Source: Ylistrum balloti (taxonomy: Eukaryota). From it: a stretch of 64,000 nucleotides of DNA. The translations under genes and the position numbers were made by a program. The notes under the pieces are model-generated. The model had not been told where the DNA came from. It searched no databases and saw only the letters and a list, made by a program, of their open reading frames with translations. Position 1 is the first letter of the stretch. Each line of letters begins with the position of its first letter. This document shows positions 1 to 60,695 of the stretch, piece after piece. The stretch spans positions 1,054,001 through 1,118,000 of the forward strand of contig NW_026782036.1 in the NCBI RefSeq assembly GCF_031769215.1, in the 5' to 3' direction.

Positions 1-3000
1 ATATTGTTCTATTGTAGGATATAACACGGATAATTGTAGGATATAACACGGATAATAGTTCTATTGTAGGATATAACACGGATAATTGTTCTATTGTAGG
101 ATATAACATGGATAATTGTATGTTCTATTGTAGGATATAACACTGATAATTGTTCTATTGTAGGATATAACACGGATAATTGTTCTATTGTAGGATATAA
201 CACGGATAATTGTTCTATTGTAGGATATAACACGGATAATTGTATGTTCTATTGTAGGATATAACACGGTATGTTCTATTGTAGGATATAACACGGATAA
301 TTGTTCTATTGTAGGATATAACACGGATATTTGTTGTATTGTAGGATATAACACGGATAATAGTATGTTCTATTGTAGGATATAACACGGATAATTGTAT
401 GTTCTATTGTAGGATATAACACGGATAATTGTTCTATTGTAGGATATAACACGGATAATTGTTCTATTGTAGGATATAACACGGATAATTGTATGTTCTA
501 TTGTAGGATATAACACGGATAATTGTTCTATTGTAGGGTATAACACGGATAATTGTTCTATTGTAGGATATAACACGGATAATTGTTCTATTGTAGGATA
601 TAACACGGATAATTGTTCTATTGTAGGATATAAATAATTGTTCTATTGTAGGATATAACACGGATAATTGTTCTATTGGATATTGTTGTTCTATTGTTCT
701 TGTTCTATTGTAGGATATAACACGGATAATTGTTCTATTGTAGGATATAACACGGATAACGGATAATTGTTCTATTGTAGGATATAACACGGATATAACA
801 CGGATAATTGTTGTTCTATTGTAGGATATAACACGGATAATTGTTCTATTGTAGGATATAACACGGTTCTATAATATAACACGGATAATTGTTCTATTGT
901 AGGATATAACACGGATAATTGTTCTATTGTAGGATATAACACGGATAATTGTTCTATTGTAGGATATAACACGGATAATTGTTCTATTGTAGGATATAAC
1001 ACGGATAATTGTTCTATTGTAGGATATAACACGGATAATTGTTCTATTGTAGGATATAACACAGATAATTGTATGTTCTATTGTAGGATATAACACGGAT
1101 AATTGTTCTATTGTAGGATATAACACGGATAATTGTATGTTCTATTGTAGGATATAACACGGATAATTGTATGTTCTATTATAGGATATAACACGGATAC
1201 TTGTTCTATTGTAGGATATAACACGGATAATTGTATGTTCTATTGTAGGATATAACACGGATAATTGTTCTATTGTAGGATATAACACGGATATTGTAGG
1301 ATATAACACGGATAATTGTTCTATTGTAGGATATAACACGGATAATTGTATGTTCTATTGTAGCATATAACACGGATAATTGTTCTATTGTAGGATATAA
1401 CACGGATAATTGTTCTATTGTAGAATATAACACGGATAATTGTTCTATTGAAGGATATAACACGGATAATTGTATGTTCTATTGTAGGATATAACACGGA
1501 TAATTGTTCTATTGTAGGATATAACACGGATAATTGTATGTTCTATTGTAGGATATAACACGGATAATTGTATGTTCTATTGTATAGGATATAACACGGA
1601 TAATTGTTCTATTGTAGGATATAACACGGATAATTGTTCTATTGTAGGATATAACACGGATAATTGTTCTATTGTAGGATATAACACGGATAATTGTTCT
1701 ATTGTAGGATATAACACGGATAATTGTTCTATTGTAGGATATAACACGGATAATTGTATGTTCTATTGTAGGATATAACACGGATAACTGTATGTTCTAT
1801 TGTAGGATATAACACGGATAATTGTTCTATTGTAGGATATAACACGGATAATTGTATGTTCTATTGTAGGATATAACACGGATAATTGTTGTTCTATTGT
1901 AGGATATAACACGGATAATTGTTGTTCTATTGTAGGATATAACACGATAATTGATAATTGTTCTATTGTAGGATATAACACGGATAATTGTTCTATTGTA
2001 GGATATAACACGGATAATTGTTCTATTGTAGGATATAACACGGATATTTGTTCTATTGTAGGATATAACACGGATAATTGTTCTATTGTAGGATATAACA
2101 CGGATAATTGTATGTTCTATTGTAGGATATAACACGGATAATTGTTCTATTGTAGGATATAACACGGATAATTGTTCTATTGTAGGATATAACACGGATA
2201 ATTGTATGTTCGGATAATTGTGTTCTATTGTAGGATATAACACGGATAATTGTTCTATTGTAGGATATAACACGGATAATTGTTCTATTGTAGGGTATAG
2301 AACGGATAATTGTATATTCTATTGTAGGATATAACACGTATAATTGTATGTTCTATTGTAGGATATAACACGTATAATTGTATGTTCTATTGTAGGATAT
2401 AACACGGATATTTGTTCTATTGTAGGATATAACACGGATAATTGTTCTATTGTAGGATATAACACGGATAATATTGTAGGATATAACACGGATAATTGTT
2501 CTATTGTAGGATATAACACGGATAATTGTTCTATTGTAGGATATGATAGGATATAACACGGATAATTGTTCTATATGATATTGTTCTATTGTAGGATATA
2601 ACACAGATAATTGTATGTTCTATTGAAGGATATAACACGGATAATTGTTTTATTGTAGGATATAACACGGATAATTGTTCTCTTGCAGGATATAACACGG
2701 ATAACTCTTCTATTGTAGGATATAACACGGATAATTGTATGTTCTATTGTAGGATATAACACGGATAATTGTTCTATTGTAGGATATAACACGGATAATT
2801 GTTCTATTGTAGGATATAACACGGATAATTGTTCTATTGTAGGATATAACACGGATAATTGTATGTTCTATTGTAGGATATAACACGGATAATTGTATGT
2901 TCTATTGTAGGATATAACACGGATAATTGTATGTTCTATTGAAGGATATAACACGGATAATTGTTTTATTGTAGGATATAACACGGATGATTGTTCTATT

Positions 3001-3375
3001 GTAGGATATAACACGGATACTTGTTCTATTGTAGGATATAACACGTATAATTGTATGTTCTATTGTAGAATATAACACGGATAATTGTTCTATTGTAGGA
3101 TATAACACGGATAATTGTTCTATTGTAGGATATAACACGTATAATTGTTCTATTGTAGAATATAACACGGATAATTGTTCTATTGTTCTATTGTAGGGAT
3201 ATAACACGGATAATTGTTCTATTGTGATATAACACGGATAATTGTTCTATTGTAGGATATAACACGGATAATTGTTCTATTGTAGGATATAACACGGATA
3301 ATTGTTCTATTGTAGGATATAACACGGATAATTGTATGTTCTATTGTAGGATATAACACGGATAATTGTATGTTC
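1..3375. repeat. Tandem satellite, 30-bp unit (TTGTTCTATTGTAGGATATAACACGGATAA) with interspersed 34-bp variant (+TATG), roughly 105-110 copies, truncated by the window edge; lies in intron 7 of the SLC5 gene
   Basis: Unit read directly. Units are contiguous with no spacers. All ORFs at 9..3207 are translations of this repeat. Confidence 0.98.
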
Positions 3376-3758: not shown

Positions 3759-6700
3759 TTAGCACCATTAAGACAAGAGATCCAGCCACCATTATAACCG
3801 TCTGTAATGTGTCCGTATACATCACAGCCTTCAATCCTCCTGTAAAATAATAGTAGTTATAGCATCAGGGTATCTTAGGCAAGGGAAACAATGCAAGACC
3901 TTAGACAAACATCAATGTATGACAAAATTGTTTATTAATATAACAACAATATAATTAGTATTATGTTGACTTTATTTCCCTTCTTTGATAAATCATCAAG
4001 AATCTTGTTACCGGGGTAATCAATACTATTGTAATAGTTTAAGATTATTATAATAAACAAGTATATAGATGACGTTGAGTAGTTTGATTTATGTTTTCAG
4101 CAAATGCAACTGACGGCGTTATCAAAAATAAAATCAGAATTCATGCTATTTCCTAGTTCCTAATTAGTGTACATTGCATTTGTAAAGATGTACATTTTTG
4201 TTATGACGACATTGAAATTACTTCACATTGTTTATATGCCGTCGGCACTGGTTGGTTTATTTTCGTAATTTTCGATATGTTGTATCTGTGAAGAGTTGTT
4301 TGTAATGAAAAAGTTATCACTAACATTCAATACCAAACGTAGATGTAATTTTAACATGAACGATCGAACATACCGTAAATCAGCTACAAAACATAAAGTG
4401 AAAAATCCAAGTAATATCAATGTTGATGAAACGGTGTCTTTGGAAAGAAGGAAGTTAACGCCCACGTGTTTACAAGATGTATTGCTTCTCATTGTAATAC
4501 ATCGAGCGGGATACTGATGTACCAACCTGAGACAGTATACAGAGCAGATATTCCTAACAACAGGAAAACTCCCGCGTATAGGTCCCATCCTACAGCCTGC
4601 TGTATGAATATTGTTCCCGCAAACATGTCAACCTAAAGATACAACTGACTAGGCTGGATACAAATGCGACATCAAATGTTCAAGGTCCAAAGAGAATGCA
4701 ACGAATCAAGCAAGCTATTTCTTACATGTTTTGTCTATTACACACAGCTCCGGTTCTGTTTGTTTGCCAAAGGGAAGATATTTTAAAACAGTTTTAACTA
4801 TTCACATTATACTTCAACAATTGGCCAACACGAAAGGTAACATTAACACTTCGTAGTCTATGATAACATAAATCTTTACTCAATCCTTCCCATGTTAACA
4901 CTCAATCCTTCCCATGTTAACACTCAATCCTTCCCATGTTAACACTCAATCCTTCCCATGTTAACACTCAATCCTTCCCATGTTAACACTCAATCCTTCA
5001 CATGTTAACACTCAATCCTTCCCATGTTAACACTCAATCCTTCCCATGTTAACACTCAATCCTTCCCATGTTAACACTCAATCCTTCACATGTTAACACT
5101 CAATCCTTCCCATGTTAACACTCAATCCTTCACATGTTAACACTCAATCCTTCACATGTTAACACTCAATCCTTCACATGTTAACACTCAATCCTTCCCA
5201 TGTTAACACTCAATCCTTCCCATGTTAACACTCAATCCTTCACATGTTAACACTCAATCCTTCCCATGTTAACACTCAATCCTTCACATGTTAACATACA
5301 TGTTTCATGTATTAAATAAAGACGTCTCTTTTATTTGAATACGGGTGATCGTTCATTAGACAATTTTTTAACGAAAAAATATACAGTATGGTTCAAGGTT
5401 CCTTACTTACGGATATTTTAGTGAAGACATATATGAGAAGCGATAATACTGCCATGTAGATCTGGAGACGTTGACCACCAAACCTTCTCATGAGGTACTC
5501 CGGTAAGGTGTATACCTGCAAACAGATATACATATATCTATAAATGGTATCTTTAGCATACAGCATATAAATAATTATCATTTACTTACAGAAATGAAGC
5601 TTTATAACGAGAAACAAAAAGTGCATCTCCCGTTTCTATCAGTGCCACACCTTTGGCAGTCCAATGCATGATCACATAAAGACAATACAACTGTAGAATA
5701 CAACTTAAGTTATCATCTGACATATACTTGCTATTCGAAAAAAAGTGTTTCGTCAGGAAACTTCTAACAGCAATGGTGTCCAGACATACCCCGCTTGAAA
5801 TGTAGATGGGTACAAAAAGCCATCCCAACAGCAGTAGACAGAACAATCCCTACAAATAGACACATATATCAATGGTTCATTTAGTTATTGATTTACTATC
5901 ATGACCTTTCGGCAGATGAAAAAAGGGAAATTAGAAGGAATTAAGTGAAATTGAAAGCAGAGTAGAGAACATGAGAAGAAATGGAGTCGTATATCTCGCC
6001 AGTGAGTACTAACAAAATAAGTTCACAACAAGGCCACTATAATACAGTTATGAATACAAATGACGACCAAATTGGTGACATTTTATTTTATTAAATTAGA
6101 TAGTGTCATGATATTAACACAAAAATTTAAGACTCAAATACAACATTACTTGATATAGATTTCAGTAAACTGTAGTTGTCATCTTAAGGGTACAAGAGCG
6201 GCTACTGCCTAATAGTCTAATCAGGTTGAAAAACATCGCCACAAAGACACTTCTAAATGAAGACAAAATGTCCTTCCCATTCAGAATACAGAAGAGGTTG
6301 AGAAGAGAAATCGGAAAGAGGTGAAGACGTTACTTGAATACCAACTATGTTTTACAAGGTGACCGTTACAATGTATAACTAAGCAGCACAAAATAAACTA
6401 TGACAGTAAACCAGCCTAGTCATTGGATATCGGCTGAAGCAAAATAGTCATCAATGACAAAGTCCTTTTATGTACTCTAATATATGTAAATTCTAGCGTT
6501 ATCTGTTGTTGATACAGTCCTTATAGTAACAAGGTTATGTCACTTACATGGCAACCATAGATTGGTACCTATATAAACATGATCTAAGATAGAAATAGGA
6601 CGCGTGATTTACTAACATATAATTCTTTAGGCGGCGACGAAAGATACAAATGTATATATTTGCTGATAGAACGTATTTACGTAATTACAACACAAACTCA

Positions 6701-8777: not shown

Positions 8778-10590
8778 TGTTGTAATTGCTGTTTTTGTCG
8801 TTGTTGTTGATGATGTTACTACAGCTGTCAGTACCGTGTCGCCATGTTCTTGTTATCTGTCACTGCTGTGACAGTCGCATTCCTCGTATCGTAATAAAGG
8901 TTGTGTTGCTACAGAGTTATCAGTAAGGTCCCGAACGATTTACAATATATCAAAACGAAACATTGTTAATCCGTCCTACGTGAAATATACACAACGGAGG
9001 GCACTAACAGTTGTCGTCTACTTCAGTGGTGTACAGGTAACTGCTGCCTTCCTTTAAGGACGCCACTATTCACATCACGTGTCTATGTACCTAGGATCGT
9101 CCGCCATATAAACCACCAGTGTGTTTACACTAACTCGCCTATTACAAACACACACCATCACATCTTAATTCAGTGATAATATCCGATACATCTTCATCAT
9201 ACCCTTAAATATACTAGAAAGTTTGTCTACTGCTAGGCGCAATCTTTGAAAAGTAAAGGTGTCTAATAACCGCTACTTCCCTTAGATGTACGCTGACGGA
9301 TACGGTGTTAATGTATGGAGCAAAAATAACGAAACCTTGTTATATGGCCTTTCTAAGGGTATGTTCATTTTAGCGTGACGAGAGACTTTGTCGATGACTC
9401 ATTACTTAAGATTTTAATGATATGGTTTTTACAGCATCACATCCCACCTCTCATCGTTTAACTTTGGATCTATTGGTCCCATATTCCTATATACGACTGT
9501 TCAACTAAATCTGGCTCTCTATAGCTCGGTGAAGACTATTGGGTTCTGTTTTCTTCATGGTGATGTATCAGTATACTTTCCCGTTGACTTTGACGTTTGA
9601 TCTGGTCCTTCTTTTAAAAGAATTATAGCATATTTGTCCATTTAAATTACAGCCTATTGGACAGCTCTTTTTTTTTGGAAGGTTGTATATTTTGCTCACT
9701 TTCACACTGATTTATATATTGGCCACGTGTCTTATTTGTCACGTTCTTTCGCATTCTATTTATCTACATGCACTTCTATCTAAAGTTACCCGAGGTGCAA
9801 AATTTGTTTATCTATTTTACTTAAATTTAAGGGCGGTTTGTAAACATACTTGTAGACATCTAATACATTGAAACGTTTACTTACAATCTATACGTTTACC
9901 TGTATATTGCCCTCTGGTTTAAAGTTTGTTTAGCATTTGATTTATACTTCTTAGTATCCCTTTCTAATTCATCCGAATAAAACCAGTTTGCATAACGTCA
10001 TATATAAACGGATTATTAATCTTATTAACATTAATGATATTACTGAATACTAACACGAAACATCAATGATACTGTGATGATACTGCAATTCACTTAAGGA
10101 AGGAGTTGTCAATAGTTTAAATACTGTAATTCATTACAAATTACTTGTCAGTGTCATTTCTTGCATTTTTTCATAGATATCTCGGCTGCAACAATGTTAT
10201 ATTTACTAATGAAGGAAGGTCGCGTTAGAGGAAGCAATTAACTACAATATTTCACGGATTTCGAAGAAAACTGTACCAGAGAGCGGGTAAATCGACTGCA
10301 TGATATGTTGGATTTACTTTCAGAATGAGCTAAACCCATTTGGTTTCTCATTATAAAAATAGAGATTGATATCTAGAATGAAAATAAAACACAATTATTT
10401 TGTCACAATTTTTAATCTTCTATTAACGATTTACAAAATAGATATTTCATTGTGACTGTAGATAAGTCATTAAGTACCTTGATCCTTGACTGCAGATAAA
10501 GATAACGAAGGAAACCCCATTTTTTTTATTTTATTAATTTTTTTCTAAGAAATGCTGCCTTACCATGCCAAATTATAAAAAAAATAAATA

Positions 10591-11700
10591 TTGTCTAGTG
10601 ATGGTAGCCTCCTGTATTTATATCGATCTCCTTGTCTAGTGATGGTAGTCTCCTAAATTTATACTGGACTCCTTGTCTAGTGACGGTAGCCTCCTATATT
10701 TATATTGAACTCCTTGTCTAGTGATGGTAGTCTCCTGTATTTATATTGGACTCCTTGTCTAGTGACGGTAGCCTCCTGTATTTATATCTAACTCCTTGTC
10801 TAGTGATGGTAGCCTCCTGTATTTATATCGAACTCCTTGTCTAGTGATGGTAGTCTCCTGTATTTATATTGGACTCCTTGTCTAGTGACGGTAGCCTCCT
10901 GTATTTATATCTAACTCCTTGTCTAGTGATGGTAGCCTCCTGTATTTATATCGAACTCCTTGTCTAGTGATGGTAGTCTCCTGTATTTATATTGGACTCC
11001 TTGTCTAGTGACGGTAGCCTCCTGTATTTATATCGAACTCCTTGTCTAGTGATGGTAGCCTCTTGTATTTATATCGAAATGCTTGTTTAGTGATGGTAGC
11101 CTCCTGTATTTATATCGAACTCCTTGTCTAGTGATGGTAGCCTCCTGTATTTATATCGAACTCCTTGTCTAGTGATGGTAGCCTCCTGTATTTATATCGA
11201 ACTCCTTGTCTAGTGATGGTAGCCTCCTGTATTTATATCGAACTCCTTGTCTAGTGATGGTAGCCTCCTGTATGTATATTGGACTCCTTGTCTAGTGACG
11301 GTAGCCTCTTGTATTTACCTTGAACTCCTTGTCTAGTGATGGTAGCCTCCTGTATTTATACTGGACTCCTTGTCTAGTGATGGTAGCCTCCTGTATTTAT
11401 ATCGAACTCCTTGTCTAGTGATGGTAGTCTCCTGTATTTATATTGAACTCCTTGTCTAGTGACGGTAGTCTCCTGTATTTATATCGAACTCCTTGTCTAG
11501 TGACGGTAGCCTCCTATATTTATATTGATCTCCTTGTCTAGTGATGGTAGCCTCCTGTATTTATACTGGACTCCTTGTCTAGTGACGGTAGCCTCCTGTA
11601 TTTATATCGAACTCCTTGTCTAGTGATGGTAGCCTCCTGTATTTATATTGAACTCCTTGTCTAGTGATGGTAGTCTATTGTATTTATATTGGACTCCTAG
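10591..11700. repeat. Satellite, 41-bp unit TTGTCTAGTGATGGTAGCCTCCTGTATTTATATCGAACTCC x~27, directly abutting a PLE RT remnant
   Basis: Period 41 read from starts at 10591 and 10632. The last unit continues in frame into PLE RT sequence. Confidence 0.97.
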
Positions 11701-12800
11701 ACTGCTCCAGAATCCCTTTCAACGGTGTTTTTAATTTTCGGTCGTCTTGTTGTTTCACAAAACCTTTTGTCGGATCTTCTTACTATCATTCTTAGTTCTA
11801 TCAAACAAGGGTTACAGTCTTACTATGATTCTGTCTTCTCTAGAAAAAGGAAATAATGACAGATGGCTTTAGAGAACTCGAAAGGGCATATGACCAATAT
11901 TTTAACATCCCCCTCTTCCTTAGAACTTTTGATTTTTAACTCTGTTCACCCCTGTAAACCATTCCAAACTAAAGGAAAACCTCCTTGTTATGCGAGCTTT
12001 CTTTTCCAAGAAGATTAATCTACTAGAGCGTAACTTTTGAAAAGTACGTCAAATCAAACGAAATCTACCAAGGATGGAATAAAAAAGTGATCGGATTTCT
12101 TGTTGACAATCTTTCGTTGAGTTTTGCAGTAAGATCATCAAACAGATTATAAGCCTACCTTTTCTTGACTGACTTGTTTTCGTTTTCAAAGGAGTGTTGA
12201 TTTAACGAGGAGCTGATCAAAAGAGGTTATGAAGACCTTGCGAAGGCACTCAATTTCACTTTTAAATATATTGATGATGCATTGTATATAAATAACAAGA
12301 TATTTTGATGACAATGGTCATCGTTTGTACCCACCAGAATTGGAAATCTAGGACACGACAGACTCTTCTACATCAGTCGTTTATCTTTTCCCACAACGAA
12401 CCCGACAGTGACAACTTTCCAACAAGCTATATGAGAAGCCTGGGGATTTTCAATTTCCATATTGTGATTTTTTCATTTCTAAAAATAACAACGTTCATGC
12501 ACCCACAACCAATAGCATTTACATGTCGCAATTGATTTGATATTTTAAGGCTTTTAGTCCAGTACTATTAATTTCGTGGAAGGTGTCAGCAAGTGTCATA
12601 CAAAGTCATAATACAGGGCTTCGAGAGATTCAGGTTGGTGATAGTTACAGGGGAGTTTTCGGTAGTTGCAGAAACCTCATTGGGAAATTAACTATAGGCT
12701 AAAACTTACATACCGGACGTCATCGATGAAGCATAAGACGCTTTCTCTTCCTGAACACTTGAACTTATTCCTTTTCATGAGTCTCTGAGTATTCTTTCTT
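11660..12800 (+). mobile_element. Decayed Penelope-like retroelement, RT-terminal (Naiad-like) type, 5'-truncated
   Basis: Frameshifted and stop-interrupted translation shows LLYLYWTPRLLQNPF, TKP.SDLLTIILSSIKQGLQSYYD, an FDF.TL-like motif, GFLVDN, LNFTFKYIDDAL (YIDD catalytic motif) and DFQFPYCDF, followed by the conserved 3' tail. No endonuclease follows the RT. The Naiad assignment is from recalled motif similarity. Confidence 0.85.
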
Positions 12801-24750: not shown

Positions 24751-25964
24751 CAGTTGTTTTCTTAACTGCAATAGTTCTAAGTTCTAAAGGGCTTCATTGT
24801 TAAAACCGTGGAGGTAACTATCAAGAAATTAACCGATTTCATATTTCTTTATATTGACTGATTTTAAATGTATGTATATTCTGAGCAGTAATATATGTAC
24901 ACTGGTACACATACTTTTAGCTTTTATCATCTGGTGTATGGTGTCTTGTTAATAAAATTCCGTAGATAACGCCTACCTGATTCAGACACAGCCATCTTAA
25001 TTCTATTAGAACTTTCTGAGAATTTAACATAGATATGTGGAATATATTGATACCAGCAGTATCTCTTTAAACGTTATTGACGTGACTTAAAGAAAAAGTG
25101 CGCTGACATGTTGAAACATACAATGGCCTTTTGCAGATGTACGTTGACCAAAGTTCTCACGCCAAGTACGCTGACTCACACAATCGTCAACGTAGAGGTT
25201 CAAGTCATTATCGTACTTATCATTTTCAAAGCAAAACACAATTTTTTTTATGTTTTTTTTTTTTTTTTTTGGCTTTTTGGAGGTGGGTTTTGTTTGTTTG
25301 GTTTTTATTTTTGTTATGCAACATGACGAATATATGACAGATTATTTCTACGTGGTGAAATAATGAAACTGTAACAAGCCTTCTTTGTAAGAGATAAGGC
25401 CTTATCATTATTTGTGGCTCTCCCAAGAATTTTACCAGACACACCACATGTGAATAACACTTTTCAATAGAAAATTGGTAAATTTAACTGCATTTTAGAA
25501 ATGTTTAGTTTTTCCATGCTCTTGATCACATATATTAAGGGGTGTCAATTCTTATCATGTTCTGAAGGAATATTGCTTTAAATTGCCTGCAATTATATTG
25601 TGGTGTGAGACTTATTTGGATGGCATTTCAGAACATTACTACATTGATCAAATTGGTATCCTCTGTAAAATAGTTTGATGAAACTAAATAAAATTTAAGA
25701 TGTATTTCTATTATTTTAAAGAGTCAATGCATATGATTCGAAATGTGAAGGTATTCAGTGAATAAACAGTTTTAATACAATGCTAAGAAATCAGTATATG
25801 TTGTAATTCAACCAGTTTCCCATGTTTAACTTGCAATGTATATTGACATAAATCTATTCTGAAATGAAATAATGCGTTTGATCATATTCTGTCAAAAATA
25901 TAATTCACTCATATAAAATATGGTATCTGATGCCCCACATCATGTACTTGATTAATAGCAACGT

Positions 25965-27815
25965 ATTTCTAGTGACATTGGATTAAAAGTTTGTTTTTTC
26001 TAGTGGTACTGGATTAACAGTTTGTTTTTCTAGTGTTACTGGATTAACAGATTGTATTTCTAGTGTTACTGGATTAACAGATTGTATTTCTAGTGGTACT
26101 GAATTAACAGTTTGTTTTTCTAGTGGTATTGAATTAACAGTTTGTATTTCTAGTGGTATCGGATTAACAGATTGTATTTCTAGTGGTATTGAATTAACAG
26201 ATTGTATTTCTAGTGGTACTGGATTAACAGATTGTTTTTCTAGTGGTACTGGATTAACAGATTGTATTTCTAGTGGTACTGGATTAACAGTTTGTTTTTC
26301 TAGTGTTACTGGATTAACAGATTGTATTTCTAGTGGTACTGGATTAACAGTTTGTATTTCTAGTGGTACTGGATTAACAGTTTGTTTTTCTAGTGTTACT
26401 GGACTAACAGATTGTATTTCTAGTGGTACTGGATTAACAGATTGTATTTCTAGTGGTACTGGATTAACAGATTGTATTTCTAGTGGTACTGGATTAACAG
26501 TTTGTTTTTCTAGTGGTACTGGATTAACAGATTGTATTTCTAGTGGTACTGGATTAACATATTGTATTTCTAGTGGTACTGGATTAACAGTTTGTTTTTC
26601 TAGTGTTACTGGATTAACATATTGTATTTCTAGTGGTACTGGATTAACAGTTTGTTTTTCTAGTGGTACTGGATTAACAGATTGTATTTCTAGTGGTACT
26701 GGATTAACAGTTTGTTTTTCTAGTGTTACTGGATTAACAGATTGTATTTCTAGTGGTACTGGATTAACAGTTTGTTTTTCTAGTGGTACTGGATTAACAG
26801 TTTGTATTTCTAGTGGTACTGGATTAACATATTGTATTTCTAGTGGTACTGGATTAACAGTTTGTATTTTTAGTGGTACAGGATTAACAGTTTGTTTTTC
26901 TAGTGGTACTGGATTAACAGATTGTATTTTTAGTGGTACAGGATTAACAGATTGTATTTCTAGTGGTATCGGATTAACAGTGTCGTATTTCTAGTGGTAC
27001 TGGATTAACAGTTTGTATTTCTAGTGGTACTGGATTAACAGTTTGTTTTTCTAGTGGTACTGGATTAACAGCTTGTATTTTTAGTGGTACAGGATTAACA
27101 GATTGTATTTCTAGTGGTACTGGATTAACAGATTGTATTTCTAGTGGTACAGGATTAACAGATTGTATTTCTAGTGGTACTGGATTAACAGATTGTATTT
27201 CTAGTGGTACAGGATTAACAGATTGTATTTTTAGTGGTACAGGATTAACAGATTGTATTTTTAGTGGTACAGGATTAACAGATTGTATTTCTAGTGGTAC
27301 TGGATTAACAGTGTCGTATTTCTAGTGGTACTGGATTAACAGATTGTATTTCTAGTGGTACTGGATTAACAGATTGTATTTCTAGTGGTACTGGATTAAC
27401 AGATTGTATTTTTAGTGGTACTGGATTAACAGATTGTATTTCTAGTGGTACTGGATTAACATATTGTATTTCTAGTGGTACTGGATTAACAGATTGTATT
27501 TCTAGTGGTACTGGATTAACAGTTTGTTTTTCTAGTGTTACTGGATTAACAGATTGTATTTTTAGTGGTACAGGATTAACAGATTGTATTTCTAGTGGTA
27601 TCGGATTAACAGTGACGTATTTCTAGTGGTACTGGATTAACAGTTTGTTTTTCTAGTGTTACTGGATTAACAGATTGTATTTCTAGTGGTACTGGATTAA
27701 CAGATTGTATTTCTAGTGGTACTGTATTAACAGTTTGTTTTTCTAGTGGTACTGGATCAATAGTTTGTTTTTCTAGTGGTACTGGATTAACATTTGTATT
27801 TCTAGTGGTATTGGA
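25965..27815. repeat. Satellite, 30-bp unit TTTCTAGTGGTACTGGATTAACAGATTGTA, ~61 copies
   Basis: Two units per 60-nt line over long stretches. Occasional 31-bp variants (GTGTCGTA) shift the register. Confidence 0.98.
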
Positions 27816-28484
27816 TTTACATTAATGTACATAAAGCGGTATTAACAGTAACAGACTTTTATATGGATTTAAATAACAGTAACGTATCAACGTGTCAGTT
27901 AATTAACGTTTTGCCATTTTTTACCTCTAAATGAATTATAGGACGTCACGCAAATAAGCCATTTCTGTTTTACACAGAAAAAAAAATCATTAAACATCCT
28001 TATTTTATGTAGATTAACACAAAAAATATCTCGAGTAGCATTTCATATTCTCAAGACTCAATCTATATTTTCCAGTAGGATCCAAACAAATTATACAATG
28101 ACGTAATCACCAAAGTGGGTAAAGCATTTGTCAAGTTCGCAGTGATATTCTAGGCTCTCACGAGAGGAATTTACGTATTCATAGCAACCATGTGAACCCG
28201 CGAATACTCCCATAGGGGCCGCCAGATGTTTTATAACTGACGTACACTAATGAAAAGCTGGCACTCCCAACAAAACAATATTGGTTGGCGTCAGTGTTCT
28301 TAAGACGTTGTTAAGAGATCAGGTATGGTTATAAAACCGCGGCTTCGGATCCGTTTACATAAATGGACGTATTTTCTGGTCATTTCATAATTTGATTTTA
28401 AAAGTTGGTATTAACATATTTCAATGAATTTATTTCAATATTCAGTAATTTATTTCTTTAATTTGTTTTTGTTTTCATACAAGG

Positions 28485-50188: not shown

Positions 50189-51083
50189 GTGTTGACGCTT
50201 TGCTGAACATTTTCCCAGTGTTGATGTTTTGCTGAACATTTCCCAGTGTTGACGCTTTGCTGAACATTTCCCAGTGTTGACGCTTTGCTGAACATTTCCC
50301 AGTGTTGACGCTTTGCTGAACATTTTCCCTGTGTTGATGTTTTGCTGAACATTTCCCTGTGTTGAAACTTAGCTGAACATTTCCCAGTGTTGACGCTTTG
50401 CTGAACATTTTTCCAGTGTTGAAACTTAGCTGAATATTTCCCTGTGTTGACGCTTTGCTGAACATTTTCCTGTGTTGAAACTTAGCTGAACATTTCCCTG
50501 TGTTGATGTTTTGCTGAACATTTCCCAGTGTTGACGCTTTGCTGAACATTTTTCCAGTGTTGAAACTTAGCTGAACATTTCCCTGTGTTGACGCTTTGCT
50601 GAACATTTTCCAGTGTTGAAACTTAGCTGAACATTTCCCTGTGTTGATGTTTTGCTGAACATTTCCCAGTGTTGACGCTTGGCTGAACATTTCCCTGTGT
50701 TGACGCTTTGCTGAACATTTCCCTGTGTTGACGCTTTGCTGAACATTTTCCCAGTTTTGATGTTTTGCTGAACATTTCCCTGTGTTGACGCTTTGCTGAA
50801 CATTTCCCTGTGTTGACGCTTTGCTGAACATTTCCCTGTGTTGAAACTTAGCTGAACATTTCCCTGTGTTGAAACTTAGCTGAACATTTCCCAGTGTTGA
50901 CGCTTTGCTGAACATTTCCCTGTGTTGAAACTTAGCTGAACATTTCTCAGTGTTGAAACTTAGCTGAACATTTCTCTGTGTTGACGCTTTGCTGAACATT
51001 TCCCTGTGTTGACGCTTTGCTGAACATTTCCCAGTGTTGCCGCTTTGCTGAACTTTTCCCAGTGTTGACGCATTGCTGAATAT
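50189..51083. repeat. Satellite, 28-29-bp unit GTGTTGACGCTTTGCTGAACATTTCCC(A/T), ~31 copies, with GAAACTTA and GATGTTT variants
   Basis: Period read from 50246 and 50274. ORFs 50131-50999 are repeat translations. Confidence 0.97.
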
Positions 51084-51159
51084 TAGCTGTCCTGTGTGTT
51101 AACGTCATATTAATTTTCGTCATTACGGACTGTCTGCTTGCTAAAAATTGAGTTCACAC

Positions 51160-52140
51160 TGCACTGTTTATCGTCCTGTCAGTTAACAAGGTCCCTCAGT
51201 GTTTACACTGTATTGTTTATTGTCCTGTGAATTAACAAGGTCCCTCTGTGTTTATACTGTACTGTTTATCGTCCTGTCAGTTAACAAGGTCCCTAAGTGT
51301 TTATACTGTACTGTGTATTGTCCTCTCAGTTAACAAGGTCCCTCTGTGTTGATGCTGTACTGTTTATTGTCCTGTGAATTAACAAGGTCCCTCAGTGTTT
51401 ACACTATACTGTTTATTGTTCTGTGAATTAACAAGGTCCCTCTGTGTTTATACTGTACTGTTTATTGTCCTGTGAATTAACAGGGTCCCTCAGTGTTTAT
51501 ACTGTACTGTTTATTGTCTTGTGAATTAACAAGGTCCCTCTGTGTTGACGCTGTACTGTTTATTGTCCTATGAATTAACAAGGTCCCTCTGTGTTGATGC
51601 TGTACTGTGTATTGTCCGGTGTATTAAAAAGGCCCCTGTATTTATACTGTCCTGTTTATTGTCCTGTGAATTAACAAGGTCCCTCTGTGTTTATACTGTA
51701 CTGTTTATTGTCCTGTGAATTAACAAGGTCCCTCAGTGTTTATACTGTACTGTTTATTGTCCTGTGAATTAACAGGGTCCCTCTGTGTTTATACTGTACT
51801 GTTTATTGTCCTGTGAATTAACAGGGTCCCTCAGTGTTTATACTGTACTGTTTATTGTCCTGTGAATTAACAAGGTCCCTCAGTGTGTATACTGTACTGT
51901 TTATTGTCCTGTGAATTAACAAGGTCCCTCTGTGTTTACACTATACTGTTTATTATCCTGTGAATTAACAAGGTCCCTCTGTGTTTACACTATACTGTTT
52001 ATTGTCCTGTGAATTAACAAGGTCCCTGTGTGTTGATACTGTACTGTTTATTGTCCTGTGAATTAACAGGGTCCCTCAGTGTTTATACTGTACTGTTTAT
52101 TGTCCTGTGAATTAACAAGGTCCCTCTGTGTTGACACTGT
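51160..52140. repeat. Satellite, 49-bp unit GTCCTGTGAATTAACAAGGTCCCTCTGTGTTTATACTGTACTGTTTATT, ~20 copies
   Basis: Period read from 51661 and 51710. Confidence 0.97.
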
Positions 52141-52239
52141 AGGTTATTTTCCCTATATGCTGCTGCTGTGTTAAGAATGTCTTTCTCCCTTTGTTTGGAT
52201 ACTGCGTCTCCGTTGTATTGATTTTCCTCTATATATTAA

Positions 52240-55200
52240 TATTGTGGTAGATTTTGTCCCTGTGTGTTGATATTGTGGTAGATTTTGTCTCTGTGTGTTG
52301 ATATTGTGGTAGATTTTGTCTCTGTGTGTTGATATTGTGGTAGGTTTTGTCCCTGTGTATTGATATTGTGGTAGATGTTATCTCAACGTGAGGATATGGT
52401 GGTCTCTTTTATCTCAATGTGACGATATTGTGGTATATTTTGTCTCGGTGTGTTGATATTGTGGTATATTTTGTCTCTCAATGTGATGATATTGTGGTAT
52501 ATTTTGTCTCTGTGTGTTGATATTGTGGTATATTTTGTCTCTGTGTGTTGATATTGTGGTATATTGTGTCTCAATGTGTTGATATTGTGGTATATTTTGT
52601 CTCTGTGTGTTGATATTTTGGTATATTTTGTCTCGGTGTGTTGATATTGTGGTATATTGTGTCTCAATGTGTTGATATTGTGGTATATTGTGTCTCAATG
52701 TGTTGATATTGTGGTATATTTTGTCTCAATGTGTTGATATTGTGGTATATTTTGTCACTGTGTTTTGATATTGTGGTATATTTTGTCTCTGTGTATTGAT
52801 ATTGAGGTATATTTTGTCTCTGTGTGTTGATATTGTGGTATATTTTGTCACTCTGTGTTGATATTTTGGTAGATTTTGTCTCTGTTTGTTGATATTGTGG
52901 TAGATTTTGTCTCTGTGTATTGATATTGTGGTAGATTTTGTCTCTGTGTGTTGATATTGTGGTAGATTTTGTCTCTGTGTATTGATATTGTGGTAGATTT
53001 TGTCTCTGTGTATTGATATTGTGGTAGATTTTGTCTCTGTGTGTTGATATTGTGGTAGGTTTTGTCACTGTGTTGATATTGTGGTATATGTTATCTCTGT
53101 GTGTTGATATTGTGGTAGATTTTGTCTGTGTGTGTTGATATTGTGGTATATTTTGTCTCTGTGTGTTGATATTGTGGTATATTTTGTCTCTCAATGTGAT
53201 GATATTGTGGTATATTTTGTCTCTCAATGTGTTGATATTGTGGTATATTTTGTCTCCGTTTGATGATATTGTGGTATATTTTGTCTCTGTTTGATGATAT
53301 TGTGGTATATTTTGTCTCAATGTGTTGATATTGTGGTATATTTTGTCTCAATGTGTTGATATTGTGGTATATTTTGTCTCAATGTGTTGATATTGTGGTA
53401 TATTTTGTCTCAATGTGTTGATATTGTGGTATATTTTGTCTCAATGTGTTGATATTGTGGTATATTTTGTCTCAATGTGTTGATATTGTGGTATATTTTG
53501 TCTCAATGTGTTGATATTGTGGTATATTGTGTCTCAATGAGATGATATTGTGGTATATTGTGTCTCAATGTGTTGATATTGTGGTATATTTTGTCTCTCT
53601 GTGTTGATATTGTGGAATATATTGTCTCTGTGTGTTGATATTGCGGTATATTTTGTCACTCTGTGTTGATATTGTGGTATATTTTGTCTCTGTTTGATGA
53701 TATTGTGGTATATTTTGTCTGTGTGTGTTGATATTGTGGTATATTTTGTCTTCGTCTGATGATATTGTGGTATATTTTGTCTCTATGTGTTGATATTGTG
53801 GTATATTTTGTCCATGTGTATTCATATTGTGGTATATTTTGTCTCTCTGTGTTGATATTGTGGTATATTTTGTCTCTGTGTGTTGATATTGCGGTATATT
53901 TTGTCTCTGTGTATTGATATTGTGGTATATTTTGTCTCTGTGTTTTGATATTGTGGTATATTGTGTCTCAATGTGTTGATATTGTGGTATATTTTGTCTC
54001 TGTGTATTGATATTGTGGTATATTTTGTCTCAATGTGTTGATGATATTGTGGTATATTTTGTCTCAATATGTTGATATTGTGGTGTATTTTTTCCCTGTG
54101 TGTTGATATTGTTGTATATTTTGTCTCTGTGTATTGATATTGTGGTATATTTTGTCTCAATGTGTTGATGATATTGTGGTATATTTTATCTCAATTTGTT
54201 GATGTTGTGGTATATTTTGTCCATGTGTATTGATATTGTAGTATATTTTGTTTGTGTTATTGATATTGTGGTATTTTTTGTCTCAATGTGTTGATGATAT
54301 GGTGGTCACTTTTATCTCAAAGTGATGATATTGTGGTATTTTTTGTCTCAATGTGTTGATGATATGGTGGTCTCTGTTATCTCAAAGTGATGATATTGTG
54401 GTATTTTTTGTCCCTGTGTGTTGATATTGTGATATATTTTGTCTCTGTGTTTTGATATTGTGGTATATTGTGTCTCTATTTGACGATATTGTGGTATATG
54501 TTGTCTCTGTGTGTTGATATTGTGGTATATATTGTCTCTGTTTGACGATATTGTGGTAGATGTTGTCTCACTGTGTTGATATTGTGGTATATGTTATCTC
54601 TGTGTGTTGATATTGTGGTATATTTTGTCTCTCAATGTGATGATATTGTGGTATATTTTGTCTCTGTGTGTTGATATTGTGGTATTTTTTGTCCCTGTGT
54701 GTTGATATTGTGATATATTTTGTCTCTGTCTGATGATATTGTGGTAGATTTTGTCTGTGTGTGTTGATATTGTGGTATATTTTGTCTCTGTGTGTTGATA
54801 TTGTGGTATATTTTGTCTCTCAATGTGATGATATTGTGGTATATTTTGTCTCTGTGTGTTGATATTGTGGTATTTTTTGTCCCTGTGTGTTGATATTGTG
54901 ATATATTTTGTCTCTGTCTGATGATATTGTGGTATATTTTGTCTCTGTGTGTTGATATTGTGGTATTTTTTGTCCCTGTGTGTTGATATTGTGGTATATT
55001 TTGTCCCCGTCTGATGATATTGTGGTATATTTTGTCTCTGTGTGTTGATATTGTGGTATATTTTGTCCCCGTCTGATGATATTGTGGTATATGTTGTCTC
55101 TTTGTGTTGATATTGTGGTATATTTTGTCACTGTGTGTTGATATTGTTGTATATTTTGTCTCTGTGTGTTGATATTGTGGTATATTTTGTCCCCGTCTGA

Positions 55201-55878
55201 TGATATTGTGGTATATTTTGTCTCTGTGTGTTGATATTGTGGTATTTTTGTCCCTGTGTGTTGATATTGTGATATATTTTGTCTCTGTCTGATGATATTG
55301 TGGTATATTTTGTCTCTGTGTGTTGATATTGTGGTATATGTTGTCTCTGTGTGTTGATATTGTGGTATATTTTGTCCCCGTCTGATGATATTGTGGTATA
55401 TTTTGTCTCTGTGTGTTGATATTGTGGTATATTTTGTCCCCGTCTGATGATATTGTGGTATATTTTGTCTCTGTCTGATGATATTGTGGTATATTTTGTC
55501 AACGTGTGTTGATATTGTGGTATATTTTGTCCATTTGTATTGGTATTGTAGTATATTTTATCTCAATGTGTTGATATTGTTGTATTTTTTGTTTCGATGT
55601 GTTGATATTGTGGTATATTTTGTCTCCGTCTGATGATATTGTGGTATATTTTGTCTCTGTGTTGATATTGTGGTATATTTTGTCAACGTGTGTTGATATT
55701 GTGGTATATTTTATCTCAATGTGTTGATGTTGCGGTATATTTTGTCCATGTGTATTCATATTGTGGTATATTTTGTCTCTGTGTATTGATATTGTGGTGT
55801 ATTTTGTCTTTGTCTGATGATACTGTGGTATATTTCGTCACTGTGTGTTGATATTGTGGTATATTTTGTCTCTGTGTC
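52240..55878. repeat. Satellite, ~31-bp unit GTGTGTTGATATTGTGGTATATTTTGTCTCT, ~115 copies
   Basis: Read directly. ORFs 52383-55971 are repeat translations. Confidence 0.97.
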
Positions 55879-58800
55879 CATTTGTCCCCATCTACTGATG
55901 TTTTGGCACAAATTGTACCTTTCTACTGATGTTTTGACATATTTTGTCCCTCTCTGCTGATGTTTTGGCACAATTTGTCAATATCTACTGTTGTTTGTAT
56001 ATTTTGGCACAATTTGTCCATATTGTGTTTTATATTTTGCACAATTTGATATCTGCTGGTATATTATGTTTTGGCACTATTTGTTCCTATCTACTGATGT
56101 TGTGACATATTTTGTCCCTATCTATTGATGTTTTGGCACAATTTACCCATATCTACTTATGTTTGGCACAGTTTCTCCCTTTCTACTGATGTTTTGGCAC
56201 AATTTGTCCCTATCTACTGATGCACAATTTATTTTGGCATATTTTGACATATTTTGTCTCCTATTGGCACAATTTGACTGATGTTTTGGCATATTTTTCT
56301 CCCTATCTACTGATGTTTTGGCACAATTTGTCCCTCTCTGATGTTGTGATTTGTCAATATCTAATGTTTTGGAACAATTTGTATTTTTGCACAATTTTGT
56401 ATCCTATTGTTTTGCTATATGTTACTTGGCACAATTTGTCCTATCTACTGATGTTTGACATATTTTGTCTTATGTTTTGGCACAATTTGTCCATATCTAT
56501 TGATATTTTTGGCACAATTTGCCCATATCTACTGATGTTTTGGCACAATTTTTCCCTATCTACTGATGTTTTGGCACAATTTGTCTCTATCTACTGATGT
56601 TTTGGCATATTTTCTCCCTTTCTACTGATGTTTTGGCACAATTTGTCCATATACTGATGTGATTTGCACAAATTCTCCCTTTCTACTGATGTTTTGGCAC
56701 AATTTGTCCATATCTACTGATGTTGTGATATTTTGTCAATATCTACTGATGTTTTGGAACAATTTGTCCCTATCTACTGATTTTTTTGCACAATTTGTCC
56801 ATATCTCTATGATTTTGGCATATTTGTCCCATATCTGTCTGATGTTTTATATGATCATATTTGTCCCATATCTACTGATGTTTTGGAACAATTTGTCTAC
56901 TGATGTTTTGGCACAATTTGTCAATATCTACTGATGTTTTGGCACTGACTGTATATTTTTTTTGTCCCATATACTGATGTTTTGACACAAATTGTACCTT
57001 TCTACTGATGTTGTGACATATTTTGTCCCTCTCTGCTGATGATGTGGCACAATTTGTCAATATCTTCTGATGTTTTGGCATATTTTCTCCCTTTCTACTG
57101 ATGTTTTGGCACAATTTGCCCATATCTACTGATGTTTTGGCACAAATTGTACCTTTCTACTGATGTTGTGACATATTTTGTCCCTCTCTGCTGATGTTTT
57201 GGCACAATTTGTCAATATCTACTGTTGTTTTGGCACAATTTGTCCATATCTATTGATATTTTTGGCACAATTTGTCCCTATCTGCTTATTTTTTTGGCAC
57301 AATTTGTCCCTATCTACTGATGTTGTGATATATTTTGTCAATATCTACTGATGTTTTGGAACAATTTGTCCCTATCTACTGATTTTTTTGCACAATTTGT
57401 CCATATCTACTGATGTTCTGACATATTTTGTCCCTATCTGCTGATGTTTTCGCACAATTTGTCCCATATACTGATGTTTTGGCACAAATTGTACCTTTCT
57501 ACTGATGTTTTGGCACCATTTGTCCCTATCTACTGATGTTTTGGCACCATTTGTCCCTATCTACTGATGTTCTGACATATTTTGTCCCTATCTGCTGATG
57601 TTTTGGCACAATTTGTCCATATCTACTGATTTTTTGGCACAATTTGTCCCTATCTACTGATGTTCTGACATATTTTGTCCCTATCTGCTTATGTTTTGGC
57701 ACAATTTGTCCCTATCTACTGATGTTGTGACATATTTTGTCCCAATCTACTGATGTCTTGGCACAATTTGCCCATATCTACTGATGTTTTGGTACAAATT
57801 GTCCCTATCTGCTAATGTTTTATTTGTCCCTATCTGTTGATTTTTTTGGCACAATTTGTCCCTATCTACTGATGTGACATATTTTGTCCTTCTCTGCTGA
57901 TGTTTTGGCACAATTTGTCCCCTTTCTACTGATATCTACTGATGTTTTGGCACAATTTGTGTATCCTATCTTTTGATGTTTATCTGTTGATGTTTTGGCA
58001 CAATTTGTCCATATCTACTGATGTTTTGGCACCATTTGTCCCTATCTACTGATGTTTTGGCACCATTTGTCCCTATCTACTGATGTTTTGGCACTATTTG
58101 TCCCTATCTACTGATGTTTTGGCACAATTTGTCCCATATCCTGATGTTATCTACAATTTGTCCCATATCTACTGATGTTTTGGCATATTTGTCCCTTTCT
58201 ACTGATGTTTTGGCACAATTTGTCCCTATCTACCGATGTTGTGATATATTTTGTCCCTATCTACTGATGTTTTTGCACAATTTGTCCATATCTACTGATG
58301 TTTTGGCACCATTTGTCCCTATCTACTGATGTTTTGGCACCATTTGTCCCTATCTACTGATGTTTTGGCACCATTTGTCCCTATCTACTGATGTTTTGGC
58401 ACCATTTGTCCCTATCTACTGATGTTTTGGCACCATTTTTCCCTATCTACTGATGTTTTGGAACAATTTGTCCCTATCTACTGATTTTTCGGCACAATTT
58501 GTCCATATCTACTGATGTTCTGACATATTTTGTCCCTATCTGTTGATGTTTTGGCACAATTTGCCCATATCTACTGATGTTTTGGCACAATTTGTCCCTA
58601 TCTGCTGATGTTTTGGCACAATTTGTCCCTATCTACTGATGTTGTGACATATTTTGTCCCTATCTATTGATGTTTTGGCACAATTTACCCATATCTACTG
58701 ATTTTTTGGCACAATGTTACTGATGTTGTGACATATTTTGTCCCAATCTACTGATGTCTTGGCACAATTTGCCCATATCTACTGATGTTTTGGTACAAAT

Positions 58801-60695
58801 TGTCCCTATCTGCTAATGTTTTTGCACATTTTGTCCATATCTACTGATGTTGGTGACATATTTTGTCCATATCTACTGATGTTTTGGCACAATTTGGCCC
58901 CATGTGCTAATGTTTTGGCACAATTTCTCCCTATCTACTGATGTTGTGACATATTTTTTGTCCATATCTGCTGATGTTTTGGCACAATTTGTCCCATATA
59001 CTGATGTTTTGCCACAAATTGTACCTTTCTACTGTTGTTGTGACATATTTTGTCCCTCTCTGCTGATGTTTTGGCACAATATGTCAATATCTGCTAATGT
59101 TTTGGCACAATTTGTCCATATCTATTGATATTTTTGGCACAATTTGTCCCTATCTGCTTATATTTTGGCACCATTTGTCCCTATCTACTGATGTTGTGAC
59201 ATATTTTGTCCCTATCTGTTGATGTTTTGGCACAATTTGCCCATATCTACTGATGTTTTGGCACAATTTGTCCATATCTACTGATTTTTGGCACAATTTG
59301 TCCCTATCTGCTTATATTTTGGCACCATTTGTCCCTATCTACTGATGTTGTGACATATTTTGTCCATATCTACTGATGTTTTGGCACAATTTGTCCCTAT
59401 CTACTGATGTTGTGACATATTTTGTCCCTATCTACTGATGTTTTGGCACAATTTGCCCATATCTACTGATGTTTTGGCACAATTTGTCCATATCTACTGA
59501 TGTTTTGGTACAATTTGTCCCTATCTACTGATGTTCTGACATATTTTGTCCCTATCTGCTTATGTTTTGGCACAATTTGTCCCTATCTACCGATGTTGTG
59601 ATATATTTTGTCCCTATCTACTGATGTTTTTGCACAATTTGTCCCTATGTACTGATGTTGTGATATATTTTGTCCCTATCTACTGATGTTTTTGCACAAT
59701 TTGTCCCTATCTACTGATGTTTTGGCACTATTTGTCCCTATCTACTGATGTTTTTGCACCATTTGTCCCTATCTACTGATGTTTTGGCACCGTTTGTCCA
59801 TATCTACTGATGTTTTGGCACCATTTGTCCATATCTACTGATGTTTTGGCACCATTTGTCCCTATCTACTGATGTTTTGGCACCATTTGTCCATATCTAC
59901 TGATGTTTTGGCACCATTTGTCCCTATCTACTGATGTTTTGGCACCATTTGTCCCTATCTACTGATGTTTTGGCACCATTTGTCCCTATCTACTGATGTT
60001 TTGACACCATTTGTCCATATCTACTGATGTTTTGGCACCATTTGTCCCTATCTACTGATGTTTTGGCACCATTTGTCCCTATCTACTGATGTTTTGGCAC
60101 CATTTGTCCCTATCTACTGATGTTTTGGCACCATTTGTCCCTATCTACTGATGTTTTGGCACCATTTGTCCCTATATACTGATGTTTTGGCACCATTTGT
60201 CCCTATATACTGATGTTTTGGCACCATTTGTCCATATCTACTGATGTTTTGGCACCATTTGTCCCTTTCTACTGATGTTTTGGCACCATTTGTCCCAATC
60301 TACTGATGTTTTGGCACCATTTGTCCCTATCTACTGATGTTTTGGCACCATTTGTCCCTATATACTGATGTTTTGGCACCATTTGTCCATATCTACTGAT
60401 GTTTTGGCACCATTTGTCCCTATCTACTGATGTTTTGGCACCATTTGTCCCTATCTACTGATGTTTTGGCACCATTTGTCCCTATATACTGATGTTTTGG
60501 CACCATTTGTCCATATCTACTGATGTTTTGGCACCATTTGTCCCTATCTACTGATGTTTTGGCACCATTTGTCCCTATATACTGATGTTTTGGCACCATT
60601 TGTCCCTATATACTGATGTTTTGGCACCATTTGTCCATATCTACTGATGTTTTGGCACCATTTGTCCCTATCTACTGATGTTGTGGCATATTTTG
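55879..60695. repeat. Satellite, 31-bp unit TATCTACTGATGTTTTGGCAC(A/C)ATTTGTCCC, ~150 copies, heterogeneous on the left and homogenised on the right
   Basis: Period read from 60061 and 60092. The variant TGATGTTGTGACATATTTTGTCCC is interspersed. Confidence 0.97.

What the first reader, a model, noticed from the sequence alone, without database searches (positions are those of the whole stretch)
10591..11760. A 41-bp satellite apparently born from a retroelement reverse-transcriptase coding motif
The final satellite unit reads without a junction into the decayed PLE: AGT GAT GGT AGT CTA TTG TAT TTA TAT TGG ACT CCT AGA CTG CTC CAG AAT CCC TTT = SDGSLLYLYWTPRLLQNPF. This matches the conserved PLE RT motif L(P)YLYW(T/I)PK(L/M)HKNP(Y/F), and the YLYWTP part lies inside the repeat unit. 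The ~27-copy array thus looks like tandem amplification of 41 bp of RT ORF, with the parent element still attached. Many units retain the TGG (W) codon and others carry CGA, recording post-amplification variants. This would be a locally preserved TE-to-satellite transition.
Basis: partly seen in the sequence, partly recalled or inferred. Interest (0 to 1): 0.7.

Follow-up and report, generated by a model that had tools for sequence, protein, structure and literature searches.

The report
Minisatellite born inside dead retroelement copy
A 41-base piece of the coding sequence of a long-dead Penelope-like (Naiad-type) retrotransposon copy in a scallop genome was copied head-to-tail 27 times where it sat, which is a clear but ordinary example of a tandem repeat arising from a transposon.

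Summary
A 41-bp x 27.0 array with no indels lies at 10591-11698 and runs without a break into a decayed reverse-transcriptase ORF.

The same retroelement also continues on the left of the array, detectable from about 10256. When left flank plus first unit and last unit plus right flank are aligned to other genomic copies of the family, the two alignments overlap by about one unit (50 nt = 41 + 9). The 9 nt are a stretch that the window copy lacks. Other copies and intact relatives carry this segment once.

[quoted passage not shown] That makes the family a Naiad-type Penelope-like element.

- The array is a single-locus minisatellite, not a satellite family.
- The amplification happened in an already decayed copy.

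A second copy of the family (L013) carries an independent 48-bp x 6 internal array. Arrays cover 6.2% of the 185 kb of loci sampled.

TE-derived minisatellites are well known, so this is a new member of a known kind.

The parts
10256..10590 (+). Left remnant of the retroelement copy, covering the pre-RT part of the ORF. It includes a decayed DK(A) motif that reads V-D-K-S at 10458-10469. The copy is 5'-truncated or undetectable upstream of about 10256.
   Evidence: blastn hits to the region upstream of the YWIPK motif in L067, L063, L060, L005, L041 and L062 at 65-77% identity, colinear. Alignments shown. The 61 nt next to the array match best at the same 9-nt shift as the unit.
10591..11697 (+). 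27 head-to-tail units of 41 bp: the minisatellite. No reading frame survives, because 41 is not a multiple of 3.
   Evidence: TRF. Register print-out. Mean pairwise difference between units 8%, with 47 transitions against 10 transversions relative to the majority unit.
10714..11082 (+). Higher-order repeat of three units (123 bp) present 3 times. The first two copies are identical at 123/123 and the third matches at 119/123.
   Evidence: Unit-type string ABCDEFDEFDGHIFFFJKLFMNOLGPQ. HOR identities.
11124..11246 (+). Run of three identical units of the majority type (type F). The unit before them differs by one base.
11657..11697 (+). Last unit, reading LSSDGSLLYLYWT(P). It keeps the TGG codon of the family's YW(I)PK motif and joins the right remnant in frame.
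   Evidence: tblastn of the intact relative P0057 runs through it. blastn alignments to other copies begin at unit positions 25-29.
11696..11716 (+). Decayed RT motif 1, reading P R L L Q N P where the family has P K L H K N P.
11698..12790 (+). Right remnant of the retroelement: an RT domain with several frameshifts and in-frame stops. FKYIDD (YIDD at 12267-12278) is the catalytic motif. Homology to other copies ends near 12790.
   Evidence: More than 2236 first-look candidates in the genome, and the scored ones are about 65-75% identical. Coverage map. tblastn of P0026, P0057 and P0011 aligns to 11642-12639 in three frames.

Best explanation
A copy of a Naiad-type Penelope-like retrotransposon inserted here and decayed. 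It is 5'-truncated, or at least undetectable upstream of about 10256. Later, a 41-bp stretch of its dead ORF was duplicated in tandem where it sat. This stretch holds the codons just before RT motif 1, which read ...L-P-x-L-Y-W-I-P in working relatives.

The first duplication probably arose by replication slippage or imprecise break repair (inferred). The array then grew to 27 units by unequal sister-chromatid exchange, slippage or gene conversion. Some of these events involved three-unit blocks. During this growth a derived variant (TGG -> TGA -> CGA) spread to become the commonest unit type.

The array is a neutral, single-locus minisatellite with no coding capacity. It is one product of a process that is frequent in this scallop genome.

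Shown: homology of the unit to the element, colinear flanks on both sides, a single unit in other copies, a single locus, and a multi-unit duplication.
Inferred: the molecular mechanism of the first duplication, and neutrality.
For: Both flanks belong to the same element and overlap by one unit.
- Left flank plus first unit and last unit plus right flank map onto the same copy with 50 nt of overlap in L062, L060, L041 and L005.
- The overlap is 45-53 nt in L063, L056, L022, L013 and L055.
- 50 nt = 41 + a 9-nt stretch (GGATACGGA in most copies) that the window copy lacks.

Unit homology is given.

Other copies and intact proteins carry the segment once.

The array occurs at one locus only. The positive control, a dispersed 31-bp satellite from this window, gave 181 candidates on many contigs.

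Growth by multi-unit events: the 123-bp block is duplicated at 123/123 identity, there are three identical consecutive units, and most edge units are among the more divergent from the majority unit.

Amplification came after decay.
- All 27 units share the 9-nt deletion (0 indels).
- All 27 lack the proline codon of the LP dipeptide that is kept in all the distant relatives listed (positions 22-24 read CTG, CTA or TTG).
- Unit-to-copy identity of 61-73% is about the same as flank-to-copy identity of about 68%.

The process recurs. L013 has a 48-bp x 6 array at 97% identity inside another copy of the family, at a different position, and it passes the same two-flank overlap test under strict scoring.

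The array and both junctions are present in contigs of 4 independent samples.
Against: - The 70 nt just left of the array are AT-rich and so decayed that strict local alignments stop 90-125 nt short of the array. Colinearity there rests on matching distances (72 nt in the window and 72 nt in L062), on permissive alignments, and on a best-shift test with z of about 3.6.
- The homology of the unit's 5' 17 nt needs a 9-nt gap. A gapped-alignment shuffle test with a heavy gap penalty was not significant (z = 0.63).
- No flanking direct repeats or microhomology longer than 1 nt are visible at the unit boundaries, so the mechanism of the first duplication is not shown.
- Homogenisation within arrays can make an old array look young, so the timing is an inference.
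Confidence: 0.9

Rival explanations
1. The array was made at the moment of insertion. The element's reverse transcriptase, a sister of telomerase RT, copied a 41-nt stretch of its own RNA again and again during target-primed reverse transcription.
For: [quoted passage not shown] Two copies of the same family carry internal arrays.
Against: All units share changes that a working template should not have: a 9-nt in-frame deletion, and loss of the conserved LP proline and of the I in YWIPK. The unit is as diverged from other copies as the flanks are. The L013 array is 97% identical inside an old decayed copy. A 123-bp block duplicated at 100% identity shows recent DNA-level growth.
Confidence: 0.04
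2. The 41-bp repeat is an independent satellite that merely abuts the retroelement, or the retroelement inserted into it.
For: The window is packed with unrelated arrays, so a chance neighbour is conceivable.
Against: The unit itself is homologous to the element. Element sequence lies on both sides and overlaps by one unit on reference copies. No other locus of the array was found in the genome.
Confidence: 0.02
3. The array is an assembly artefact, that is, an over-expanded repeat in this assembly.
For: Short-read contigs cannot span it, so its length was not verified independently.
Against: Both junctions and several interior unit variants are present in contigs of 4 samples from 2 studies. 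The array has an ordered variant structure and a 123-bp higher-order repeat.
Confidence: 0.02
4. The array is carried by a mobile composite element, like the tandem-repeat-containing MITEs or Helentrons known in bivalves.
For: Such elements are known in bivalves (PMC3879986, listed).
Against: The array is at a single locus. Its flanks are ordinary colinear ORF sequence of the retroelement.
Confidence: 0.01

Closest known systems
TE-derived minisatellites and satellites (review: Paco et al. 2019, PMC6947457; first-duplication model of Haber and Louis 1998 as cited there)
   Same: A short internal piece of a transposable element is duplicated in tandem and then expanded by slippage, unequal crossing-over or gene conversion. 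The parent element remains recognisable.
   Different: The source here is RT-coding sequence of a Penelope-like element. The examples I saw in the review's text and table involve SINE, LINE, LTR, MITE and Helitron sources. No 5-10 bp flanking direct repeats are visible. The array stayed at one locus.
Naiad clade of Penelope-like elements (Craig et al. 2021, PMC8557442)
   Same: [quoted passage not shown] The copy number is high and copies are often 5'-truncated. No hammerhead ribozyme was found in the window.
   Different: The window copy is a dead fragment without the endonuclease part. That paper mentions tandem repeats lengthening some Chlamys families, but not an array born from the RT ORF.
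Tandem-repeat-containing MITEs and Helentron-borne repeats of bivalves (e.g. DTC84, PMC3879986)
   Same: Short arrays associated with mobile elements in bivalve genomes.
   Different: Those arrays are part of the mobile unit and are spread to many loci. This one is private to one dead copy.
LINE-derived minisatellite in the same genome
   Same: A minisatellite born inside a dead retrotransposon, in the same genome.
   Different: The parent family is different (LINE tail) and so is the locus. I did not re-test it.

Membership tests
In-situ TE-derived minisatellite | Head-to-tail units of constant length | tested here: met
   27.0 x 41 bp with 0 indels.
In-situ TE-derived minisatellite | The unit is homologous to a segment that is single-copy in other copies of the element | tested here: met
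   Identity is 25-30 of 41 to in-register copies with a 9-nt gap. Intact relatives have the motif once.
In-situ TE-derived minisatellite | Both flanks are colinear with the element, and on a reference copy they overlap by one unit | tested here: met
   50-nt overlap (41 + 9) on L062, L060, L041 and L005, and 45-53 nt on five more copies. Left-flank hits. Shift test.
Satellite DNA family (abundant, multi-locus) | Many arrays or long arrays at several loci | tested here: not met
   Only G000:C179 was found, with 1 first-look candidate. The positive control, the 31-bp satellite of 52239-55877, gave 181 candidates on many contigs.
Penelope-like element, Naiad clade | GIY-YIG endonuclease N-terminal to the RT | tested here: met
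   Met in full-length relatives only. P0022, P0026, P0117, P0144 and P0032 have PF01541 within about residues 77-203, and the match to the family's pre-RT region lies at about 400-690. The window copy lacks this part because it is 5'-truncated.
Penelope-like element, Naiad clade | CxC motif between the endonuclease and the RT | tested here: met
   A C.C motif (PCECS, CSCSSSP, CLCDS and similar) at residues 114-474 in 9 of the 10 relatives inspected. This was a regex look, not a profile search.
Penelope-like element, Naiad clade | The DKG motif is changed to DKA | tested here: met
   DKA in 52 of 58 motif occurrences among the 150 relatives. The window copy reads V-D-K-S at 10458-10469, which is a decayed form.
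Penelope-like element, Naiad clade | Reverse-transcriptase domain | tested here: inconclusive
   Pfam RVT_1 hits in relatives score 18.6-27.4 bits, below the 29.6-bit cut-off. There were no Pfam hits on decayed ORF pieces. The PK.HK, RFIAGS and YIDD motifs are present by eye.
Penelope-like element, Naiad clade | No canonical hammerhead ribozyme | tested here: met
   No Rfam family reaches its gathering score anywhere in the window. This is weak evidence, because the copy is a fragment without pseudo-LTRs.
Penelope-like element, Naiad clade | Insertion-in-fingers domain between RT3 and RT4 | not tested
   It would need an alignment with reference PLE and TERT sequences that I did not have.

The most novel reading that the evidence does not exclude
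The array was not made by the host's DNA replication or repair. It was made by the element's own telomerase-related reverse transcriptase copying a 41-nt stretch of template again and again at integration. On this reading, Penelope-like RTs keep a telomerase-like ability to add repeats, and that seeds minisatellites.
Probability: 0.04. Interest if true: 0.75.

Novelty: new member of a known kind. Interest (0 to 1): 0.3.

Why it matters
This locus catches minisatellite birth with its 'before' state still available. Thousands of sister copies of the same retroelement show what the sequence looked like before amplification, so the unit boundaries can be read to the base.

Arrays cover about 6% of the loci I sampled. 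Multi-copy transposon families could therefore serve as built-in references for cataloguing how and where short tandem arrays arise genome-wide.

By itself the locus is an ordinary and probably neutral by-product of transposon decay.

Tried and rejected
- Pfam scans of ORF pieces from the window and of 79-202-aa ORFs from other copies gave nothing meaningful. I therefore ran the one large profile-free protein search.
- An ungapped comparison of the unit's 5' 17 nt with other copies is at chance level (5.3/17 against 4.4 +/- 1.8). A gapped-alignment shuffle test with a heavy gap penalty was not significant (z = 0.63). Only the fixed-shift scan showed the 9-nt offset.
- Under permissive scoring, the arrays next to the element in L063, L026 and L057 looked element-derived. 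Under strict scoring the homology stops before those arrays, so I dropped them. Only L013 stands.
- I looked for flanking direct repeats or microhomology at the unit boundaries and found 1 nt only.
The best 5' relative (G000:C52:1376274-1376611) could not be fetched, and no genome-wide census was possible.
- No copy of the family in the 57 loci sampled has an intact ORF.

Full report
**Observation.** Tandem Repeats Finder reports an array at 10591-11698 with period 41, 27.0 copies, 91% matches and no indels. Printed in register, it is 27 full units followed by T at 11698. The last unit reads LSSDGSLLYLYWT(P) and continues in the same frame as RLLQNPFQR. At unit positions 34-36, 8 units have TGG, 12 have CGA, 5 have TGA and 2 have CTA.

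**What lies to the right.** The stretch 11699-12760 has more than 2236 first-look candidates in the 648.5-Mb genome, and the scored ones are about 65-75% identical. Every copy I fetched is decayed. Translated, these copies read ...NLSKDEILANHASVLQSFRLPINDKDTDLPRLYWIPKLHKNPYKQRFIAGSS.CSTKPLSKLLTTILSTIKSGLQSYCDTVY. The window's YLYWTPRLLQNPFQR is therefore a decayed form of LYWIPKLHKNPYKQR.

**Is the unit itself element sequence?** I anchored 18 copies on the W codon.
- The 3' 24 nt of the unit match 14.6/24 on average, against 6.3 +/- 2.2 at random offsets.
- The 5' 17 nt are at chance level without a gap. They match 54% when shifted by 9 nt, against 16-41% at the 27 other shifts.
- In-register copies then match 25-30 of 41. 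That is the same level as the roughly 68% identity of the flanks.
- The window copy thus lacks 9 nt (GGATACGGA, three codons) that most copies have. This linker varies in length in other copies too.
- A gapped-alignment shuffle test with a heavy gap penalty was not significant. The 5' third of the unit therefore rests on the shift scan and on the flank test below.

**The decisive test.** The left flank of the array is also element sequence. blastn aligns window 10256-10520 to the region upstream of the YWIPK motif in L067, L063, L060, L005, L041 and L062 at 65-77% identity, in the right order. I then aligned two pieces separately to each copy: left flank plus first unit (10200-10631), and last unit plus right flank (11657-12100). 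Both land on the same copy and overlap by 50 nt in L062, L060, L041 and L005, and by 45-53 nt in five more copies. 50 nt is the 41-nt unit plus the 9 missing nt.

Two further points support the left side. The distance from the last strong left-flank match to the first unit is 72 nt in the window and also 72 nt in L062. The 61 nt next to the array match other copies best at the same 9-nt shift (0.381 against 0.301 +/- 0.022). The weak point is that these last 70 nt or so are AT-rich and very decayed, so strict local alignments stop short of the array.

**One locus only.** Four units used as a query find only this place in the genome. A second query gives the same result. The method can see dispersed satellites: the 31-bp array at 52239-55877 of the same window gives 181 candidates on many contigs. 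The 30-bp and 39-bp arrays of the window are private, like the 41-mer. So this is a private minisatellite, not a satellite family.

**What the element is.** Pfam found nothing in the decayed pieces. A profile-free search with a 188-aa ORF from copy L005, which covers the region just upstream of the RT, found 753 relatives.
- Full-length relatives of 937-1279 aa have a GIY-YIG domain near the N-terminus and weak RVT_1 matches towards the C-terminus.
- They carry a CxC motif between the two domains, and DKA in 52 of 58 DK-motif occurrences.
- These are the features that Craig et al. 2021 give for the Naiad clade of Penelope-like elements, which they first found in oysters (PMC8557442).
- In these intact proteins the segment before PK(L/M)HK reads LPxxYW(I/L) and occurs once.
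- tblastn of P0057 and P0026 on the window runs from 11642 to 12639 in three frames with stops, and passes through the last unit.
- No Rfam family, hammerheads included, reaches threshold in the window.

**How the array grew.** The unit-type string is ABCDEFDEFDGHIFFFJKLFMNOLGPQ.
- A three-unit block of 123 bp is duplicated at 123/123 identity, with a third copy at 119/123.
- Three consecutive units are identical.
- Several edge units (B, O, Q) are among the most divergent from the majority.
- Differences from the majority unit are mostly transitions, 47 against 10.

This is the usual picture for growth by unequal exchange, slippage or conversion. TGG is the ancestral state, because it is the family's W codon. 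TGA is the intermediate and CGA is the commonest derived form.

**Timing (inference).** All 27 units share the 9-nt deletion. All 27 lack the proline codon of the LP dipeptide, which is kept even in distant relatives, and all have T in place of the I of YWIPK. The unit is as far from other copies as the flanks are, while units differ from each other by only 8%. The amplification therefore happened in an already decayed copy. This argues against synthesis of the array by the element's RT at integration, although homogenisation within arrays makes such dating soft.

**Independent support from reads.** Contigs from 4 samples (2 studies, 2 organism labels) cover the left flank up to 10620 and the right flank from 11644-11647. 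Small contigs carry interior unit variants. Both junctions therefore exist outside this assembly. No contig spans the array, so the count of 27 units is not independently verified.

**The process recurs.** In the roughly 185 kb of loci fetched around other copies, arrays with period >=10 and length >=150 bp cover 6.2%. In the window they cover about 30%. One of them, a 48-bp x 6 array at 97% identity in L013 (G000:C147), lies inside another copy of the same family, at a different position in the element. It passes the two-flank test under strict scoring, with 36-39 nt of overlap on L063 and L047. Three other arrays that looked similar under permissive scoring failed the strict test. Another note (s1-254268) says the genome is a scallop's.

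**Comparison with what is known.** Minisatellites and satellites derived from parts of transposable elements are well documented, and so is the two-step model of a first duplication followed by expansion (PMC6947457). The expected short flanking direct repeats are not visible here. The case is a clean new example of a known kind, from an unusual source: the RT-coding sequence of a Naiad-type Penelope-like element.

I built no consensus of the element family and compared copies one by one instead.

Noticed in passing
L013 (G000:C147:782636-786078), array at 2395-2682 of the locus: A 48-bp x 6.0 array at 97% identity inside another decayed copy of the same retroelement family, at a different position in the element. 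Flank plus first unit and last unit plus flank overlap by 36-39 nt on copies L063 and L047. This is an independent in-situ amplification.
   Followed up: yes
window 33-3369, 4878-5296, 25944-27821, 50189-52141, 52239-60696, 61249-63200: About 30% of the window is tandem arrays with units of 22-49 bp. The 30-bp array (25944-27821) and the 39-bp array (61249-62350) are single-locus. The 31-bp array (52239-55877) belongs to a dispersed satellite family with at least 181 candidate places on many contigs.
   Followed up: partly
Loci L002-L067 (about 185 kb around other copies of the element): Arrays with period >=10 and length >=150 bp cover 6.2% of this sample, with more than 20 different unit sequences of 19-126 bp. 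Minisatellites are very common in this genome.
   Followed up: partly
window 10626-11335, in run X5 (organism B): The sample labelled as a second organism holds both array junctions. It has no contigs for the left two-thirds of the array interior, so its array may be shorter or made of different unit variants.
   Followed up: no
window 10391-10501: In all four runs one contig joins 10391 to 10501, skipping 109 bp, with only 20 nt on the shorter side. It could be a deletion allele or a contig from another copy of the element.
   Followed up: no
L062:1-855 (-), L017:2098-3006 (-), L056:2412-3113 (-): There are open frames next to other copies of the element. By eye they look like a LINE-type endonuclease/RT N-terminus (285 aa), a Tc1/mariner-like transposase, and a seven-helix receptor-like ORF (234 aa).
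   Followed up: no
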